The notes beneath the pieces are model-generated. The model did no database searches. It had not been told where the DNA came from and worked only from the letters and a program-made list of their open reading frames with translations. A program made the position numbers and the translations under genes. A DNA stretch of 63,185 nt, the filler included, from Octopus bimaculoides (taxonomy: Eukaryota), in assembly GCF_001194135.2 (NCBI RefSeq). It is 6 parts of 5 records of this genome, joined end to end, with 100 filler letters (N's around TTAATTAATTAA, not from the genome) between each part and the next. Parts side by side here need not be neighbours in the genome. Positions count along the whole stretch, not along the records: positions 1 to 27,950 come from NC_068986.1; 5 more parts are not named here. One strand, given 5' to 3'. Positions 1,597 through 25,444 of the stretch are shown here, one piece after another. Positions within the stretch are counted from its first letter, which is position 1. The number at the start of each line of letters is the position of its first letter.

Positions 1597-1857
1597 GGAC
1601 TACAGTTTACCAAGTTACAACAGGTATACAGTCCATTTTTTGTTCTATATTGCATTGTTATACCTTCCTAAACTTTTTATTCTTTACATATAATTGTTTT
1701 GTTATTGTCAACCCTCCACTCAGGTAAAGACAGTCGTTTGGTAAGATCATTAGAGCATCGGGCAAATAACTTGTGATAATTGTTCCGGCTCTTTGCGTTT
1801 AACTTCTTCAGAGGATGACAAAGTACCTGTCAAGTACTAGAATCGATNNNNNNNNNN

Positions 1858-6071: not shown

Positions 6072-6974
6072 NNNNNNNNNNNNNNNNNNNNNNNNNNNNN
6101 NNNNNNNNNNNNNNNNNNNNNNNNNNNNNNNNNNNNNNNNNNNNNNNNNNNNNNNNNNNNNNNNNNNNNNNNNNNNNNNNNNNNNNNNNNNNNNNNNNNN
6201 NNNNNNNNNNNNNNNNNNNNNNNNNNNNNNNNNNNNNNNNNNNNNNNNNNNNNNNNNNNNNNNNNNNNNNNNNNNNNNNNNNNNNNNNNNNNNNNNNNNN
6301 NNNNNNNNNNNNNNNNNNNNNNNNNNNNNNNNNNNNNNNNNNNNNNNNNNNNNNNNNNNNNNNNNNNNNNNNNNNNNNNNNNNNNNNNNNNNNNNNNNNN
6401 NNNNNNNNNNNNNNNNNNNNNNNNNNNNNNNNNNNNNNNNNNNNNNNNNNNNNNNNNNNNNNNNNNNNNNNNNNNNNNNNNNNNNNNNNNNNNNNNNNNN
6501 NNNNNNNNNNNNNNNNNNNNNNNNNNNNNNNNNNNNNNNNNNNNNNNNNNNNNNNNNNNNNNNNNNNNNNNNNNNNNNNNNNNNNNNNNNNNNNNNNNNN
6601 NNNNNNNNNNNNNNNNNNNNNNNNNNNNNNNNNNNNNNNNNNNNNNNNNNNNNNNNNNNNNNNNNNNNNNNNNNNNNNNNNNNNNNNNNNNNNNNNNNNN
6701 NNNNNNNNNNNNNNNNNNNNNNNNNNNNNNNNNNNNNNNNNNNNNNNNNNNNNNNNNNNNNNNNNNNNNNNNNNNNNNNNNNNNNNNNNNNNNNNNNNNN
6801 NNNNNNNNNNNNNNNNNNNNNNNNNNNNNNNNNNNNNNNNNNNNNNNNNNNNNNNNNNNNNNNNNNNNNNNNNNNNNNNNNNNNNNNNNNNNNNNNNNNN
6901 NNNNNNNNNNNNNNNNNNNNNNNNNNNNNNNNNNNNNNNNNNNNNNNNNNNNNNNNNNNNNNNNNNNNNNNNNN

Positions 6975-9801: not shown

Positions 9802-11459
9802 NNNNNNNNNNNNNNNNNNNNNNNNNNNNNNNNNNNNNNNNNNNNNNNNNNNNNNNNNNNNNNNNNNNNNNNNNNNNNNNNNNNNNNNNNNNNNNNNNNN
9901 NNNNNNNNNNNNNNNNNNNNNNNNNNNNNNNNNNNNNNNNNNNNNNNNNNNNNNNNNNNNNNNNNNNNNNNNNNNNNNNNNNNNNNNNNNNNNNNNNNNN
10001 NNNNNNNNNNNNNNNNNNNNNNNNNNNNNNNNNNNNNNNNNNNNNNNNNNNNNNNNNNNNNNNNNNNNNNNNNNNNNNNNNNNNNNNNNNNNNNNNNNNN
10101 NNNNNNNNNNNNNNNNNNNNNNNNNNNNNNNNNNNNNNNNNNNNNNNNNNNNNNNNNNNNNNNNNNNNNNNNNNNNNNNNNNNNNNNNNNNNNNNNNNNN
10201 NNNNNNNNNNNNNNNNNNNNNNNNNNNNNNNNNNNNNNNNNNNNNNNNNNNNNNNNNNNNNNNNNNNNNNNNNNNNNNNNNNNNNNNNNNNNNNNNNNNN
10301 NNNNNNNNNNNNNNNNNNNNNNNNNNNNNNNNNNNNNNNNNNNNNNNNNNNNNNNNNNNNNNNNNNNNNNNNNNNNNNNNNNNNNNNNNNNNNNNNNNNN
10401 NNNNNNNNNNNNNNNNNNNNNNNNNNNNNNNNNNNNNNNNNNACATATTAGTTATGTGTGTGTGTATGTGTGTCTCTATATGTATAGAGGTATATGTGTA
10501 CATGCACAGGCACACGATTTTAAAACTGACAAAAAGTGTGAAGAGAAAAAAGCAACATTAATAATTATAAACAGAAAAGCAAAGCTTTAATATATTGCGA
10601 CATGTAACTCTAGAATCCTATATTTTTTTCTTTTAAATATCTAAGTGAAATATTCTCCCTGGTTCTTCCTCTCTATTTTTCCTCTTCCTCGTGTCTCCCA
10701 CACTTTCTCCTCTCACTCCCCCTCTCTCTCTCTCCTCTTCCCATCTTTCTCTCTCCTCTTCCCATCTTTCTCTCTCTTCTTCCCCTCTCTCTCTTGGTTT
10801 GTGTTTTGGCTTGAAAATTTGAAATCTAATTCAGTTGTGCTTTTGTTTTGAAAATCAATGTCTGCATGCTGCACACACACGCACACACATGCGCGCGCGC
10901 ATGTACACACATACACATATGTATGTGTGTGAGTGTCTATATATATAATATATATAACAAATATAATACAGATATATATATTATTTACAATATATAAATA
11001 ATATATGATATATATGTAATATACTGTAATGCATATACTATAATATATACATATATCACAAGTGTGTGTGAAAATATGCATGTATTTAGAGAGAAAAAGG
11101 TTCTATAATATGTTGTTTACTAAAATATTCTTTATTTATTTTATTTTTTTAATGTTAAACATTTCATTACGCTTTTCCTGTAGATAAAAAAAAGAAAAAA
11201 AATTCCTTATTTATTGAAGTTTCTATATAAATATATGATCGTATCACCACTAGTAACAACACTAGCATCGTCATTCATTCTATTCAGCACCATCGTTATC
11301 ATAACACTTCTTTCTTCTTTAGGTTTTCGTATTCATAGAACACGAATTGATTTCAGTTTCCAACTGCAACTAACTCACTTCATTTAAAGCCCTTAATATA
11401 CTTTGGAAAACAATACTTCTCTGATATCCCTGTTTTGAGTCAACCTATTGATATATCTG

Positions 11460-11800: not shown

Positions 11801-12203
11801 AAGAAGTCACGTATTATTTGTTTCGGAAGATAAAAGCAAAGTTCATCTTCATGATATTTAAACCAGAACGTAGAATAGTCTTTTTTTTTTTAAGTTTGAT
11901 CTTTTTGTCAGAATTTATTGAAAATTTCCTCACAGATTGGAATATTCAATGCCAAATACGAAAATTGTTATAACTTTTTTAGAGAAATTTATAAAAATCT
12001 TACGAACCTTTAAAGAATGATTTATAAAAAAAATTCAACCAATAAGGAGCCATTAATTTTTTTATACGTCGTGGCGATCCACGAATTTTTGTATTTTGTA
12101 TATAACAAAGTATCCTTTTTATTCAGCACACTAACAACTCTGCCACCTCACCGTCGTCATCATGAAACTAGTGTGCATGCAAATATGCATATATGTTACT
12201 TAC

Positions 12204-12364
12204 TCGTTCATCTTCATCATCAATCTTTAGTAAATATCCTTCGTTTGCTTCACATGCCAGCTGTGCTTCCAGCCATGGACGACGTACCATAGTAGTAATC
12301 AAATAACAGGAGTTGCTATCTGGTCTGTAGATCCAGTCCTTTGGGCAAAAATGTCCATGAGCAT
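12204..12364 (-). CDS. C-type lectin domain gene, first exon seen (CTLD N-terminal part): xAHGHFCPKDWIYRPDSNSCYLITTMVRRPWLEAQLACEANEGYLLKIDDEDER
   Basis: caatatcttttcAG acceptor (12366-12365), 161-nt exon (2+53 codons), GTaagt donor (12203-12202). C-P-x-x-W...CY...W-x-x-A-x-x-x-C...L-x-x-I-x-x-x-x-E pattern. Joins phase 0 to the exon at 1430. Confidence 0.95.
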
Positions 12365-17424: not shown

Positions 17425-17783
17425 CAAGTGGACAGACGAAAGAAAAGGGCACTCAACAAATTTGGTAGGAGTTACATGTATTATTTAAAACAGTTTTATT
17501 NNNNNNNNNNNNNNNNNNNNNNNNNNNNNNNNNNNNNNNNNNNNNNNNNNNNNNNNNNNNNNNNNNNNNNNNNNNNNNNNNNNNNNNNNNNNNNNNNNNN
17601 NNNNNNNNNNNNNNNNNNNNNNNNNNNNNNNNNNNNNNNNNNNNNNNNNNNNNNNNNNNNNNNNNNNNNNNNNNNNNNNNNNNNNNNNNNNNNNNNNNNN
17701 NNNNNNNNNNNNNNNNNNNNNNNNNNNNNNNNNNNNNNNNNNNNNNNNNNNNNNNNNNNNNNNNNNNNAGAGTCTGTCATACC

Positions 17784-20122: not shown

Positions 20123-21639
20123 TATGTACATATACACACATTTGATACTATTGTATTATATAAGTATAATACACATATATGTATATATGTGTGTGTGTGT
20201 ATATATACACACACACACGTACTAGCAATGCATCCCGGCGTTGCTTGGGTGTTATGACCTACAACCACATTATGTATTATTTCTTCCTTTCTTATGGGCA
20301 GAATCGGCACAGCTAATATATAGTGAACTGGATTATTGGCTTAATGGAAGTTATTGTTTGTTTAAAAGTGAAGCGGGGAAGGGTACAATTTGCATGAATT
20401 TGCATGAAAGTGCTTTTTGTTCTTCAGAAGGATCACAAAGTATGTATTGTTTTATCGTATAAAATGGACTTAATACGATTTTGCCCAGAAATCACGTTTT
20501 CAAATTTTTTATTTCCCCCCGTCTCCACCGCAATTTCTTAACTTGTAACATTTTTCGATTTTTTTTTATCCAGGTAAAAAAAAAAACAGAGAGATTACGA
20601 ATCTGGGAACTATATATATATATATATATATATNNNNNNNNNNNNNNNNNNNNNNNNNNNNNNNNNNNNNNNNNNNNNNNNNNNNNNNNNNNNNNNNNNN
20701 NNNNNNNNNNNNNNNNNNNNNNNNNNNNNNNNNNNNNNNNNNNNNNNNNNNNNNNNNNNNNNNNNNNNNNNNNNNNNNNNNNNNNNNNNNNNNNNNNNNN
20801 NNNNNNNNNNNNNNNNNNNNNNNNNNNNNNNNNNNNNNNNNNNNNNNNNNNNNNNNNNNNNNNNNNNNNNNNNNNNNNNNNNNNNNNNNNNNNNNNNNNN
20901 NNNNNNNNNNNNNNNNNNNNNNNNNNNNNNNNNNNNNNNNNNNNNNNNNNNNNNNNNNNNNNNNNNNNNGAAATTTGTAGTGTTTGTTGAAGAAAAAGAA
21001 GGAAGAAGAAAATTCTTAAAAAATCGTATTCTCTGTATTTTTTTGTTTTTTTTTTCTCCGTGGATTACCAAGAAAAACATTTGGAAAAAAGTAAAAATGA
21101 AGAAATTGAGGAGGGGAGGGAGAAAATTAAAATATTTTTGGGGCGAAATCCTAATCTCCTGAATCGAAAACACAGGAATCGGAAGAAATTTAGGAAAAAA
21201 ATAAGGGACGGCGCAAATGTCACCTTGGACATGCTAAAAACAACAGGTAAAGGACAGGATTTCTGGGAAAACTTCCTTTTAAGTTTATATCGAAGATCAG
21301 GTTTTTAAATACGCTCATCACAACACAAATACAAATATAGAATAGAAAAAGGTCATTTCAATCGGATTAAAATGGCATAGTTTATATATATATTACAATA
21401 ATGTTGAAACAGGGATACGGGAAAGTGCAGCATCGACGACAAAACATTTGTGGAATAAATAATGGGCTAATGCGACTAAGCGACATGTTATGAGTCCGTT
21501 TGGAGTATTCCAGGCCCTAACCTGTCATGGAAAATTGGGGCGTATGTTATTTTTTAACGCACCGTAAAACTCTTAGTGGATATACTCCCCTTTGTGGCGG
21601 TCCGCGCTGCGTCTAACATAACCCATCGTCTGAAGTTTT

Positions 21640-22177
21640 GAAACCTCCTTCGGGTTTGTTGACCTATATCACTCATAAAGTAAATTTGGAGGAACTGGTT
21701 GTTCATTTGTGGGTTACAGGGAAATAATGAGGTGATAGACTTGCCCTTGAACGTCCAGCGTCAGTGTCAATCCATGTTCAACTATCTCCTTAGATGCACC
21801 AAAGGGTGTCATTTGAAAGGCAGGGTTGTATTGTCTGATATTGTCCAGAATATCCTTTGACTGGATGGAAGTGTTTTCCAGAAGACCCATAAGACATTGA
21901 GAAAGAGCTAATAGTGCTGGCAATCTTACCTTACAGCCTGAGCAGTACATGCCATTAGCATCATTTGGAAATTATAAAGCTTTGCAGAAACGATAATTTG
22001 AATTTAGCACAACAATTTGGACAAAATTTTCAGTTTTATAAGAATGGGATGGATCACATCTGAAAGCAGCTTCAGGAGTTGTGAAGTACGAATTTGTACG
22101 AAGTCTGTTTCTGAGAGTTTTTCTATTGAACCTCTGTCTAATCAAGAAAAACGTTATTTTAATCTTTCAGCATTAAG
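21640..22177 (-). pseudogene. Helitron RepHel N-terminal region, degenerate
   Basis: Minus reading TPEAAFRCDPSHSY...VQI...FCKAL*FPNDANGMYCSGCKVRLP...DILDNIRQYNPAFQMTPFGA...LDVQGQVYHLI.SL...FLQIYFMSD matches the recalled Helitron N-terminal pattern (AF.YDP, C..C.A, MCC..GKV.LP, NIR.YNS.FQMTSFG, QGQVYH, FLQIYF). Confidence 0.9.
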
Positions 22178-23482
22178 TGCTGCAGCATACTTTTGCTGAT
22201 CTTGGGAAAGTTTCATCCCCCTCCTCTCTTGAGACTCCATTTGACATGTTGTATAATTCTTTTGCTGATCTTGCGAATGTCTCATCTCGCTTCAGTCTTG
22301 AGACTCCATTTAATGTGCTGCAGCATGCATTTGCTGATCTTGGGAAAGTCTTATCTCCTTTCTGTGTTGAGACTCCATCTGACTTGCTGCAGCATGCCTT
22401 TGCTCATTTGTGGAAAGTCTCATCTCGCCCCTGCCTTAAGACTCCATTTGACGTGCTGCAGCGTGCTTTTGATGATCTTCTGCAAGTCTCATCTCGCTCC
22501 TGCCTTCAGACTCCCTCTAACGTGCTGCAGCATGCATTTGCGGGTGTTAGGAATGTCTCATCTTCCTTCTATCATGAGACACCATTTGACTCGCTGCAGC
22601 ACGCCTTTGCTGATGTTAGGAATGTCTCATCTTCCTTTCTCTATTGAGACTCTATTTGACGTACTGCAGCATGCTTTTGCTGATTTGGAGAAAGTCTCAT
22701 CTCCCTTCTGTATTGAGACTCCATTTGACCAGCTGCTGCACGCCTTTTCTGATGTTGGGAATGTGTCATCTCCCTTCTGTATTGAGACTCCATTTGATGT
22801 GCTGCAACGTGCCTTTGCTGATCTTCTGAAAGTGTCATCTCGCTCTTGCCTTAAGACTCCATCTGACGTGCTGCAGCATGCATTTGCTGATGTTAGGAAT
22901 GTCTCATCTTCCTTCTATCATGAGACACCATTTGACGTGCTGCAGCACGCCTTTGCTGATCTGGAGGAAGTCTCATCTCGCTTCTGCCTTAAGACTCCAT
23001 CTGACGTGCTGCAGCATGCATTTGCTGATCTTGGGAAAGTGTCATCTGCCTTCTCTCTTGAGACTTTATATGGCGTGCTGTGGCATGCCTTTGCTGCTCT
23101 TGGGAAAGTCTCATCTTTCTCTCTTGAGTCTCCATTTGATGTGCTGCAGCATGCCTTTGCTGATCTTGGGAAAGTCTCATCTCGCTTCTGCCTTGAGACT
23201 CCATTTTTTGTGTTATTGCATGCCTTTGCTGATGTAGGGAATGCCTCATCTCCCTTCTGTCTTGAGACTCCATCTGACGTGCTGCAGCATACATTTGCTG
23301 ATCTCGGGAAAGTCTCATCTTCCTTTCTCACTTGAGATCCTATCTGATGTGCTGCAGCATGCCTTTGCTCATCTTGGAAAAGTCTCATCTCCCTTCTCCC
23401 TTGAGACTCCATTTGACGTGCTGCAGCATGCTTTTGCTGATCTCGGGAAAGTCTCATCTCTCTTCCCTATTGAGACTCCATT
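22178..23482 (-). repeat. 19 x 69-bp coding minisatellite; minus strand encodes 23-aa STPR-like repeats (ESQERREMRLSQDQQRHAAARQM)
   Basis: Units counted by eye from tgctgcagca; most are 69 bp, two are 70 bp and one is 66 bp. Minus-strand ORFs 22918-23457, 22989-23318 and 22641-22838 show the peptide. Directly upstream of the Helitron remnant on the same strand. Confidence 0.9.
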
Positions 23483-23821: not shown

Positions 23822-24337
23822 AACTGAAGAAAGGATAGATGCGAATAGGCAGACATTACATTGAAAGACTTCAGACAAAAATCATGCCTCCTCATTGATA
23901 TAACTGCCCCAATCGATATAAATGTATCTGTCAAGACCTATCAAAAACCGAGCAAGTATAAAGAACTTGAAATAGAAATTGACAAAATGTCGAACCTCAA
24001 GTTTAAAACAATACCTGTTGTCATAGGTGCCCGAGGAATGATAGCAAAAGGGGTTGATTCCTGTCTAGCTCAGATACCAGGAAACCCCAAAGTGGCAGAA
24101 ATTCAAAAGATAATGCTCATGGGATCTGCTCCTATCCTACGTAAAATACTGTCTATGTAATCTCAAATTTTTAAACAAACTCATAATTTTCTTGTTTTCT
24201 CAAGAACAATACTATGTGCAAAACCAAATATATGACACCTTAGGCATAACACCAACATGAACTTCTAATTGTTTCCTGAGGTCTCTGGGTGAGACTTGGA
24301 GTCAACTTGTACAAATACAAAGTAAAAGTCAAATAAA
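23822..24337 (+). mobile_element. 5'-truncated R4/Dong-clade non-LTR retrotransposon: restriction-like endonuclease C-terminus and 3' UTR
   Basis: (frameshifted) ANR[P]DITLKDFRQKSCLLIDITAP.D....K....KY..LEIEI.KM...K.KTIPVVIGARG...ILRKILSM*, the PD-(D/E)xK RLE pattern. Stop at 24158-24160; 3' end runs into a TAA array. Confidence 0.85.
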
Positions 24338-24523: not shown

Positions 24524-25444
24524 ATGCCCGGATGCAGTACCAGGCAGTGGCTCTCATGGCTTCTGATCTTAATTGAATGGAAGTGCTATCATGTACATTG
24601 TTTTGTNNNNNNNNNNNNNNNNNNNNNNNNNNNNNNNNNNNNNNNNNNNNNNNNNNNNNNNNNNNNNNNNNNNNNNNNNNNNNNNNNNNNNNNNNNNNNN
24701 NNNNNNNNNNNNNNNNNNNNNNNNNNNNNNNNNNNNNNNNNNNNNNNNNNNNNNNNNNNNNNNNNNNNNNNNNNNNNNNNNNNNNNNNNNNNNNNNNNNN
24801 NNNNNNNNNNNNNNNNNNNNNNNNNNNNNNNNNNNNNNNNNNNNNNNNNNNNNNNNNNNNNNNNNNNNNNNNNNNNNNNNNNNNNNNNNNNNNNNNNNNN
24901 NNNNNNNNNNNNNNNNNNNNNNNNNNNNNNNNNNNNNNNNNNNNNNNNNNNNNNNNNNNNNNNNNNNNNNNNNNNNNNNNNNNNNNNNNNNNNNNNNNNN
25001 NNNNNNNNNNNNNNNNNNNNNNNNNNNNNNNNNNNNNNNNNNNNNNNNNNNNNNNNNNNNNNNNNNNNNNNNNNNNNNNNNNNNNNNNNNNNNNNNNNNN
25101 NNNNNNNNNNNNNNNNNNNNNNNNNNNNNNNNNNNNNNNNNNNNNNNNNNNNNNNNNNNNNNNNNNNNNNNNNNNNNNNNNNNNNNNNNNNNNNNNNNNN
25201 NNNNNNNNNNNNNNNNNNNNNNNNNNNNNNNNNNNNNNNNNNNNNNNNNTGGTGGTGGTGGTGGTGGTGGTGGTGGTGGTGGTGGTGATGGTGGTGGTGA
25301 TGGTGATGGAGTTGAAGGTGTTCGTGGGTAGTGCTGGTGATATTGATGGTGATTATGGGAACAGTGTTAAAGTGGCAGCGATGTGGTGTTTGGTGTGGTT
25401 ATGATGAAATGACAGTGAAAATGACACCGATGATGACGACGATA

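What the first reader, a model, noticed from the sequence alone, without database searches (positions are those of the whole stretch)
22178..23482. Nineteen-unit STPR-like (23-aa) repeat array fused to a Helitron protein
Seen: 19 tandem 69-bp units whose minus strand reads E-S-Q-(E/G)-R-R-E-M-R-L-S-Q-D-Q-Q-R-H-A-A-A-R-Q-M, running straight into the Helitron N-terminus. Established: the STPR domain of Bombyx FMBP-1 is four tandem 23-aa repeats (ETSEERAARL...) that bind DNA, with conserved E1 and R9. Here E1, R6, R9 and L10 and the 23-aa period all match, and similar E-T-x-E-x-R-x-x-R-L repeats occur at the N-termini of some animal Helitrons. Inference: this lineage carried a much expanded modular helical DNA-binding array with unit-to-unit variation at a few positions (TALE- or zinc-finger-like logic), possibly for target or terminus recognition. 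It could also be raw material for domesticated cephalopod transcription factors. This copy is inactivated by stops and frameshifts.
Basis: partly seen in the sequence, partly recalled or inferred. Interest (0 to 1): 0.75.

Follow-up and report, generated by a model that had tools for sequence, protein, structure and literature searches.

The report
Decayed Helitron fragment, expanded STPR repeats
This is a dead fragment of a rolling-circle transposon (Helitron) in an octopus-type genome whose own 23-amino-acid DNA-binding repeat has been amplified to 19 tandem copies; the repeat type and its link to Helitrons are real but already recorded, and nothing shows that this long array ever worked as a protein.

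Summary
Window 22177-23482 is a 69-bp tandem array of 18.9 copies. Its minus strand reads ESQDRREMRLSQDQQRHAAARQM and leads into a decayed Helitron N-terminal domain.

The STPR reading is supported only indirectly. The real units miss Pfam STPRs (PF21107), and an idealised consensus reaches 24.3 bits against a cut-off of 27. However, the array aligns in register with N-terminal arrays of Helitron proteins that do pass the cut-off (hhalign 96.8%, E 3e-10). Such arrays, 1-11 units long and in frame with the Helitron domain, occur in 49 of the 150 nearest relatives. HELIANO (2024) already lists STPRs in Helitrons.

The idea of a 19-unit working, TALE-like array is not supported:
- An 80%-identical paralogue in Octopus bimaculoides has one unit where this copy has 19. 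The closest intact proteins have 2-5.
- This copy has no start codon or leader, no Rep domain and no helicase.
- Differences between units are neutral (codon positions 50/51/49; 11 stops against 7.1 expected).
- Units that carry stop codons were themselves duplicated.

Most likely this is a copy-specific, minisatellite-like expansion of a native coding repeat in a dead element. Interest is modest.

The parts
22177..23482 (-). Nineteen tandem 69-bp units (the last is 61 bp). The minus strand reads the 23-residue STPR-type unit ESQDRREMRLSQDQQRHAAARQM. The frame is broken by 11 stops, two +1 frameshifts and one 3-bp deletion.
   Evidence: TRF; unit segmentation; unit HMM built from relatives only gives 23.3 bits against a maximum of 7.4 in 500 shuffles; BLASTP to the P0002 array 47% identity, E 3e-17; hhalign to Pfam-positive Helitron arrays 96.8%, E 3e-10
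22177..22306 (-). Units 18 and 19, the part of the array that still aligns with the single-unit paralogue. Unit 19 corresponds to the paralogue's only unit. The odd tail of unit 18 (KNYTTCQM) aligns with the end of the paralogue's MPPKK leader.
   Evidence: Local alignment of window 22266-21329 with L001 12727-13655; blastn 80% identity over 882 bp
22080..22176 (-). Linker between the array and the Helitron domain (LNAERLK*RFS*LDRGSIEKLSETDF...). It may be a degenerate further unit. It carries two stops and a 4-bp indel relative to the paralogue that shifts the frame.
   Evidence: Three-frame translation; alignment with L001
21489..22079 (-). Remnant of the Helitron transposase N-terminal (zinc-finger-like, DNA-binding) domain, with two stops and one frameshift. 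It ends before the Rep (HUH) domain.
   Evidence: P0001 (O. bimaculoides LOC106877661) 56% identity, E 2e-21; tblastn of 150 relatives hits only 21489-23478 on the minus strand; Helraiser 7LCC residues 166-249, E 0.0015
21329..21488 (-). Non-coding tail that is still homologous to the O. bimaculoides paralogue. Homology ends here in both copies, and no Rep or helicase follows.
   Evidence: alignment end; no Rep/Hel match anywhere in the window; only a TA microsatellite is shared beyond this point

Best explanation
The region is a truncated, decayed copy of the 5' coding part of a Helitron (HLE1-type) transposase gene in an octopus-type genome.

Animal Helitron transposases of this group normally begin with a basic leader (MPPKK...). 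This is followed by a short run of 23-residue STPR-type helical repeats, typically 1-5 and up to 11 in the proteins compared. Then come the zinc-finger-like N-terminal domain, Rep and the helicase. By analogy with Bombyx FMBP-1, the repeats would lie as successive helices in the DNA major groove. They would add DNA affinity to the N-terminal domain, which Helraiser needs in order to bind and cut its ends (inferred).

In this copy the native repeat was amplified at the DNA level into a 19-unit, 1.3-kb array. The likely mechanism is replication slippage or unequal exchange between the 69-bp units, largely or wholly in a copy that was no longer coding. The array has since drifted neutrally. It behaves as a minisatellite derived from a coding repeat, not as an expanded working DNA-binding domain.
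For: 1. Shown: the array is real, and its units are homologous to native Helitron N-terminal repeats. P0002 has 5 units, with 15/23 identity to the window consensus. Three relatives reach or nearly reach the Pfam STPRs cut-off of 27 bits: P0003 36, P0062 33.2, P0096 26.6. P0062 has 10-11 units and Helitron_like_N in one ORF.
2. Shown: a paralogue in O. bimaculoides (L001 12659-13655) is 80% identical over about 900 bp. It reads MPPKK leader, ONE unit, then the same linker and domain in one frame. P0001 has two units.
3. Shown: the window copy lacks the leader and start upstream of the array and lacks Rep and helicase anywhere.
4. Shown: differences between units fall equally on codon positions (50/51/49). 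There are 22 synonymous changes against 104 non-synonymous plus 11 stops, where the neutral expectation is 19% synonymous. The STPR frame has 11 stops against 7.1 +/- 2.6 in simulated neutral decay. Intact relatives show an excess at third positions (65/50/95 and 85/64/96).
5. Shown: units 9 and 14 are 94% identical (array mean about 80%) and share an in-frame TAA. Units 9, 13 and 14 share four non-consensus columns including that stop. Units 8, 10 and 16 share another TAA. Units 3 and 13 share the same +1 insertion. Copying therefore went on after the frame was broken.
6. Literature: PMC4856987 gives the STPR structure and conserved residues. PMC4778049 shows that the Helraiser N-terminal 489 aa are needed for ssDNA binding and cleavage. 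PMC11417382 reports STPRs in HLE1 Helitrons. PMC13282606 reports an octopus Helitron burst at JC distance 0.09, close to the roughly 11% divergence of the units from their consensus.
Against: - Unit divergence (about 11% from the consensus, about 20% pairwise) is as large as the divergence between the two paralogous copies. Most of the expansion is therefore old and could predate insertion. Neutral decay after insertion would erase any earlier coding signal, so points 4 and 5 do not exclude an array that was already long in the active element.
- Only one paralogue could be compared. Its single unit could be a contraction.
- Intact arrays of 10-11 units exist elsewhere (P0062), so long arrays are tolerated in Helitron proteins.
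- The statistical support for common descent of stop-bearing units is modest for two of the groups (fraction of random triples at least as similar: 0.06 and 0.19). The shared +1 insertion lies in a short A run and could have arisen twice.
- DNA binding by these repeats has not been tested for any Helitron.
Confidence: 0.65

Rival explanations
1. One reading: the active Helitron lineage that gave rise to this copy already encoded a very long (about 19-unit) STPR array in its transposase. This copy is simply a decayed and truncated relic of that protein.
For: The units are about as diverged from each other as the copy is from its paralogue, so the expansion is old. Arrays vary from 1 to 11 units in intact relatives, and P0062 carries 10-11 in one ORF with Helitron_like_N. 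The array and the Helitron domain were ancestrally in one frame.
Against: The only close paralogue has one unit, and the nearest intact proteins have 2-5. No leader or start codon lies upstream of the array. There is no trace of coding constraint between units. Stop-bearing units were duplicated. No protein with such an array was retrieved, although those searches were technically weak.
Confidence: 0.22
2. The array is an unrelated minisatellite that was captured by, or happens to lie next to, a Helitron fragment. Its STPR-like reading is a coincidence.
For: Four of the six frames of the consensus unit are stop-free, so open frames by themselves mean little. The real units give no Pfam hit.
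Against: The last unit is orthologous to the single in-frame unit of the paralogue. The array aligns in register with Helitron N-terminal arrays (47% identity, E 3e-17; hhalign E 3e-10). An HMM built only from relatives scores it far above shuffles.
Confidence: 0.02
3. The array belongs to a host gene: a stand-alone or domesticated STPR transcription factor exon, not a transposon remnant.
For: STPR domains occur in host transcription factors such as FMBP-1 and ZNF821 (PMC4856987).
Against: There are 11 stops and two frameshifts. The array is directly continuous with Helitron N-terminal sequence that is itself broken. No called gene with these products is on record. Substitution is neutral.
Confidence: 0.03
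4. The copy number is inflated or scrambled by assembly. The window comes from a gap-rich draft, and long tandem arrays are prone to mis-assembly.
For: There are seven runs of N in the window. Gaps lie at 20634-20969 and 24607-25249 on either side of the region.
Against: The array itself holds no N. Its units differ by about 20%, which makes each one nearly unique and assemblable. The order of variants is not periodic, apart from one weak signal at a lag of 5 units.
Confidence: 0.05

Closest known systems
STPR domain (Pfam PF21107) of Bombyx mori FMBP-1 and of ZNF821-type proteins
   Same: Strict 23-residue tandem period. Glu1, Ser/Thr2 and Arg9 are conserved. Arg6 and Leu10 are present. The unit is rich in Arg and predicted to be all-helical (PMC4856987).
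   Different: The C-terminal half of the unit differs: R16, H17, A20, R21 against Tyr16, Ala17, Arg20, Leu21. The Pfam score is below the cut-off for the consensus and absent for the real units. No sequence match to the solved BmSTPR chains was found. There are 19 units against the usual 4 (range 3-7). It sits on a transposase remnant rather than a transcription factor, and it is not an open frame.
STPR-bearing HLE1 Helitrons (HELIANO survey, PMC11417382), for example Leptopilina heterotoma XP_043468040.1 (P0062) and metagenome proteins P0002 and P0003
   Same: Same architecture: basic leader, 23-residue units, zinc-finger-like N-terminal domain, then Rep. The unit sequence is up to 15/23 identical (P0002), and the alignment is in register.
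   Different: Those relatives are open frames with 1-11 units and show an excess of third-position differences. The window copy has 19 units, neutral divergence and stops, and has lost its leader, Rep and helicase. HELIANO described STPRs as lying in a separate ORF from RepHel. Here P0062 shows both in one ORF.
Helraiser (reconstructed bat Helitron) N-terminal DNA-binding domain, PDB 7LCC
   Same: The sequence that follows the array is homologous to Helraiser residues 166-249 (P0062 matches 118-658). That N-terminal region is required for ssDNA binding and cleavage (PMC4778049).
   Different: The first roughly 100 residues of Helraiser do not score as STPR units. Helraiser is a full, active transposase.
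Minisatellites derived from coding repeats, and tandem arrays carried inside mollusc Helitron/Helentron relatives (from my own knowledge of oyster Helentron-associated satellites, not checked here)
   Same: The unit is tens of bp long. Copy number differs between paralogous copies. Units drift neutrally and show block duplications.
   Different: Here the unit is the transposase's own DNA-binding repeat, not a non-coding internal region of a non-autonomous element. Spread of this array as a genome-wide satellite was not tested.
TALE repeats and C2H2 zinc-finger arrays (modular one-repeat-one-site codes)
   Same: Tandem helical repeats that track the DNA major groove. In STPR each repeat covers a fixed number of base pairs (4 bp, PMC4856987).
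   Different: There are no hypervariable specificity positions. The variation here is neutral and includes stops. The solved STPR complex recognises AT-rich DNA mainly by shape.

Membership tests
STPR domain (PF21107; FMBP-1 type) | Tandem repeats of exactly 23 residues | tested here: met
   Period 69 bp, 18.9 copies. There are 19 units in register. Only one unit has a 3-bp deletion.
STPR domain (PF21107; FMBP-1 type) | Conserved Glu1, Thr/Ser2 and Arg9 in each repeat (PMC4856987) | tested here: met
   E1 in 15/19 units, S/T2 in 19/19, R9 in 15/19 (plus one K).
STPR domain (PF21107; FMBP-1 type) | DNA-contact set Arg6, Arg9, Leu10, Tyr16, Arg20 and hydrophobic Met13, Ser14, Ala17, Leu21 (PMC4856987) | tested here: inconclusive
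   R6 (11/19), R9 and L10 (13/19) are present. Positions 13, 14, 16, 17, 20 and 21 read D, Q, R, H, A, R instead. The N-terminal half fits and the C-terminal half does not.
STPR domain (PF21107; FMBP-1 type) | Match to the Pfam model at or above the gathering score (27 bits) | tested here: not met
   Real array and real 92-109-aa pieces: no hit. Idealised consensus x8: 24.3 bits, E 4e-5. Indirect link only: related Helitron arrays score 36, 33.2 and 26.6 bits, and the window profile aligns to them with hhalign probability 96.8%, E 3e-10.
STPR domain (PF21107; FMBP-1 type) | Each repeat forms an alpha-helix; the array binds the DNA major groove | not testable with these tools
   AlphaFold2 on the 109-aa open piece gives one continuous helix, pLDDT 94. 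This is compatible but unspecific. DNA binding needs an experiment.
Helitron (HLE1) RepHel transposase gene | N-terminal zinc-finger-like domain homologous to that of known Helitron transposases | tested here: met
   P0001 56% identity, E 2e-21. 4716 relatives of P0001, many of them carrying Helitron_like_N and PIF1. Helraiser 7LCC, E 0.0015.
Helitron (HLE1) RepHel transposase gene | Rep (HUH) nuclease domain, Pfam Helitron_like_N | tested here: not met
   tblastn with 150 relatives, including full-length ones, hits only 21489-23478 on the minus strand. There is no Rep segment in the window. This is a fragment, not a complete gene.
Helitron (HLE1) RepHel transposase gene | PIF1-type SF1 helicase domain | tested here: not met
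   No match in the window. For comparison, the neighbouring copy in L001 keeps a Pif1_2B piece.
Helitron (HLE1) RepHel transposase gene | Element ends: 5'-TC, 3'-CTRR with a subterminal hairpin, insertion between A and T | not tested
   Homology to the paralogue stops inside the coding region on both sides, so no element ends could be placed.
Modular base-reading repeat arrays (TALE-like or zinc-finger-like logic) | Variation between repeats concentrated at a few specificity positions and kept under selection in an open frame | tested here: not met
   Differences fall equally on codon positions 1/2/3 (50/51/49). The synonymous share is 16% against a neutral 19%. There are 11 stops against 7.1 expected. 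Variable columns are scattered.
Minisatellite (DNA-level tandem expansion) | Unit of 10-100 bp, copy number differing between homologous copies, neutral divergence, duplication of already mutated units | tested here: met
   69-bp unit. 19 units against 1 in the paralogue. Neutral pattern. Units 9 and 14 are 94% identical and share a stop, and there are further shared stops and a shared insertion.

The most novel reading that the evidence does not exclude
An octopus Helitron lineage once made a transposase with about 17-19 STPR helices. That would be the longest STPR array known. At 4 bp per helix it would give a footprint of about 70-76 bp along the major groove, perhaps used to grip AT-rich or microsatellite-like DNA at the element's ends or targets. 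This locus would be its decayed relic.
Probability: 0.2. Interest if true: 0.55.

Novelty: new member of a known kind. Interest (0 to 1): 0.3.

Why it matters
The main value is as a clean example of two processes:
- STPR repeats are a native, copy-number-variable N-terminal module of many animal Helitron transposases. This is under-appreciated, and here it is seen in frame with the zinc-finger-like domain.
- A protein-coding repeat can turn into a minisatellite once its gene dies.

It gives no evidence for a new DNA-recognition code or for a new cephalopod transcription factor. The broader question is what the STPR units do for Helitron transposition, and whether host STPR factors and Helitron arrays share an origin. 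That question is better addressed with the intact relatives than with this locus.

Tried and rejected
- The search for homologous proteins with the real 433-aa array and with an array profile: 8000 word-sharing candidates, none passing. Even P0002 and P0003, which are in that collection, were missed. I treat these as technical negatives (candidate cap and compositional correction), not as evidence of absence.
- PDB sequence searches for the solved BmSTPR chains with the consensus array and with a profile: nothing at E <= 10.
- Metagenome scan with the array profile: returned only the P0003 contig again.
- Exact look-ups of two window ORFs, to find this locus in other assemblies: not on record.
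- HELIANO supplementary table on STPRs: not held.
Replaced by tblastn with 150 relatives.
- Helraiser residues 9-104 against the unit HMM: not significant, 54 of 500 shuffles do as well.
- Foldseek on the predicted model: not run, because a single long helix would match anything.
- The first part of my stitched query (CPNCCAKF) came from the wrong frame. The true counterpart of the C-x2-C...CC-x2-GK motif is YRFCKAL*FPNDANGMYCSGCKV. The significant part of the match is not affected.
- The 380-aa + strand ORF through the array was considered as an alternative gene and rejected. Four of the six frames of the consensus are stop-free. Zero stops against 3.7 expected gives P = 0.02 before correcting for six frames. 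Its Pfam 'CdaS_N' score has no single passing stretch.

Full report
**1. Observation**

Tandem Repeats Finder finds one outstanding array in the window: 22177-23482, period 69, 18.9 copies, 78% matches, score 1475.

Aligning the minus strand to a tandem consensus splits it into 19 units in register, the last one 61 bp long. The consensus is GAGTCTCAAGACAGAAGGGAGATGAGACTTTCCCAAGATCAGCAAAGGCATGCTGCAGCACGTCAAATG, which reads ESQDRREMRLSQDQQRHAAARQM.

In that frame the array carries:
- 11 stop codons;
- two net +1 frameshifts, the same extra A in units 3 and 13;
- one 3-bp deletion.

**2. What follows the array**

On the minus strand, about 30 codons of linker lead into sequence typical of the N-terminal domain of Helitron transposases: TTPEAAFRCDPSHSY, YRFCKAL*FPNDANGMYCSGCKVRLP, IRQYNPAFQMTPFGA, GQVYHLI, FLQIYFMSD. 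This stretch has two stops and one frameshift.

- A stitched translation hits one protein in the 5.8-billion collection: Octopus bimaculoides LOC106877661 (P0001, 56% identity, E 2e-21).
- P0001 has 4716 relatives in the representative library. Several of them carry Pfam Helitron_like_N and PIF1.
- The window fragment also matches Helraiser (PDB 7LCC) residues 166-249 (E 0.0015).
- tblastn with all 150 retrieved relatives, including full-length transposases, hits only 21489-23478 on the minus strand. No Rep or helicase segment exists anywhere in the window.
- Upstream of the array there is no counterpart of the leader or start codon.

The copy is thus a fragment consisting of array, linker and about 200 codons of N-terminal domain.

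**3. Are the units STPR?**

Direct test:
- Pfam STPRs (PF21107, cut-off 27 bits) gives no hit on the real array or on real 92-109-residue pieces.
- It gives 24.3 bits (E 4e-5) on an idealised consensus repeated eight times.
- Sequence searches of the PDB did not reach the solved BmSTPR chains.

Indirect test:
- The nearest relatives of the Helitron domain carry arrays of 23-residue units in the same position. P0002 has five units (ESQEDRARRLTQDQARHATARQE), 15/23 identical to the window consensus. P0003 has five. P0062, a Leptopilina heterotoma protein, has ten or eleven.
- P0003 scores 36 bits and P0062 33.2 bits on Pfam STPRs. P0096 scores 26.6.
- The window's longest open piece aligns to the P0002 array at 47% identity, E 3e-17.
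- A unit HMM built only from relatives scores the window array at 23.3 bits, against a maximum of 7.4 in 500 shuffles.
- A profile of the window units aligns in register with a profile of the Pfam-positive arrays (hhalign 96.8%, E 3e-10).

Against the features given for STPR in the structural paper (PMC4856987):
- The period is exactly 23.
- Glu1 is kept in 15/19 units, Ser/Thr2 in 19/19 and Arg9 in 15/19.
- Arg6 and Leu10 are present.
- The C-terminal contact positions differ.

AlphaFold2 predicts a continuous helix for the open 109-residue piece (pLDDT 94). This is compatible but unspecific.

I conclude that the units are a divergent STPR-type repeat. Membership is supported through relatives but not by the curated threshold.

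**4. Is the array native to Helitrons?**

Yes.
- With the unit HMM, 49 of the 150 nearest representatives have at least one unit just upstream of the zinc-finger-like domain. Copy numbers run from 1 to 11, mostly 1-5.
- Many begin with the same basic MPPKK or MPRK leader.
- P0062 has the array and Helitron_like_N in one ORF.
- On the P0003 contig the next ORF is Helitron_like_N.

The association itself is not new. The HELIANO survey lists STPRs among the domains stably included in HLE1 Helitrons (PMC11417382). That paper places them in ORFs separate from RepHel, which P0062 contradicts in at least one case.

**5. Is the 19-unit array a working, expanded module?**

The evidence points the other way.

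- *(a) Paralogue.* The O. bimaculoides locus fetched for P0001 (L001) holds a second Helitron remnant. It is 80% identical to window 21365-22237 over 882 bp. It reads MPPKKRRNLSRKKYKAKRIVENRSR, then ONE unit (ESEERS*MRFSQDQLMHVAA), then the same linker and domain, all in one frame. Window unit 19 is the counterpart of that single unit. P0001 has two diverged units.
- *(b) Neutral differences.* Differences between the 19 units fall equally on codon positions (50/51/49). There are 22 synonymous, 104 non-synonymous and 11 stop changes, against a neutral synonymous share of 19%. Intact arrays of P0002 and P0003 show more third-position differences (65/50/95 and 85/64/96).
- *(c) Stop count.* Simulated neutral decay of a perfect array predicts 7.1 +/- 2.6 stops in the STPR frame. 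Eleven are seen.
- *(d) Copied stops.* Units 9 and 14 are 94% identical, against an array mean near 80%, and share an in-frame TAA. Units 9, 13 and 14 share four non-consensus columns including that stop. Units 8, 10 and 16 share another TAA. Units 3 and 13 share the same +1 insertion. Copying of units therefore continued after the frame was broken.
- *(e) Recognition mode.* The solved STPR complex recognises AT-rich DNA mainly by groove shape, 4 bp per helix (PMC4856987). This gives no basis for a TALE-like code. The variable columns here are scattered.

**6. Caveats**

- The units differ from their consensus by about 11% and from each other by about 20%. That is as much as the two paralogous copies differ, and it is close to the octopus Helitron burst at JC distance 0.09 (PMC13282606).
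- Most of the expansion is therefore old. It could have happened just before this copy was made as well as just after. Neutral decay since then would hide any earlier constraint.
- Only one paralogue was available.
- The statistical support for common descent of two of the stop-sharing groups is modest (0.06 and 0.19).

I therefore put about 0.65 on expansion in a non-functional copy and about 0.2 on an array that was already long in an active element.

**7. Mechanism proposed**

Shown:
- the architecture of leader, STPR units, zinc-finger-like domain and Rep-Hel in relatives;
- the homology of the window units to those arrays;
- the truncation and neutral decay of this copy.

Established for relatives:
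- STPR helices lie in the major groove (PMC4856987);
- the N-terminal region of Helraiser is needed for DNA binding and cleavage (PMC4778049).

Inferred:
- in active Helitrons the STPR units add DNA affinity to the N-terminal domain;
- in this copy the 69-bp coding repeat expanded by slippage or unequal exchange and now behaves as a minisatellite.

**8. Verdict**

The STPR-Helitron reading is right but already recorded. The 'expanded modular array' reading is not supported. The finding is a new, decayed member of a known kind, of modest interest.

Noticed in passing
window 22193-23335 (+): The longest ORF through the array (380 aa, TTG start) lies on the opposite strand and has no stop over about 16 units. 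Four of the six frames of the consensus unit are stop-free. Zero stops against 3.7 expected gives P = 0.02 before correcting for six frames. Its Pfam CdaS_N score has no single passing stretch and looks like a repeat-sum artefact.
   Followed up: partly
L001 9962-12300 and 12659-13655 (O. bimaculoides CM046601.1): Two Helitron remnants lie head to tail. The first has the N-terminal domain, Rep and a Pif1_2B piece, and holds P0001. The second has only the leader, one unit and the N-terminal domain.
   Followed up: partly
window about 21329; L001 about 13655: The window copy and the second L001 copy lose Helitron homology at the same point, before Rep, with a (TA)n run next to it in L001. They may belong to one truncated or non-autonomous subfamily.
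   Followed up: no
window 22583-22652, 23271-23339: Units 3 and 13 carry the same one-base insertion (AGAAGG to AGAAAGG). These are the only two net frameshifts of the array. The cause is either descent by duplication or repeated slippage in the short A run.
   Followed up: partly
window 23861-24160 (+): A 99-aa ORF lies about 400 bp beyond the 5' edge of the array (MKDFRQKSCLLIDITAPIDINV...IPVVIGARGMIAKG...). It has no Pfam hit at E <= 0.01. It might be a piece of another mobile element that cut off the Helitron's 5' part.
   Followed up: partly
window about 12100-12300 (-): The translation reads CPKDWIYRPDSNSCYLITTMVRRPWLEAQLACEANEGYLLKIDDEDE. By eye this looks like the start of a C-type lectin domain and could be a host exon. 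It has no Pfam hit at E <= 0.01.
   Followed up: partly
Helraiser (PDB 7LCC) residues 9-104, as printed: The extreme N-terminus of the experimentally studied bat Helitron looks repeat-like (SxEQR... about every 20 residues). It does not score against the STPR unit HMM (54 of 500 shuffles do as well).
   Followed up: yes
window 1848-1857, 6072-6974, 9802-10442, 17501-17768, 20634-20969, 24607-25249: The piece is a gap-rich draft with six internal runs of N and very many microsatellites. Distances and copy numbers near the gaps should be read with care.
   Followed up: no
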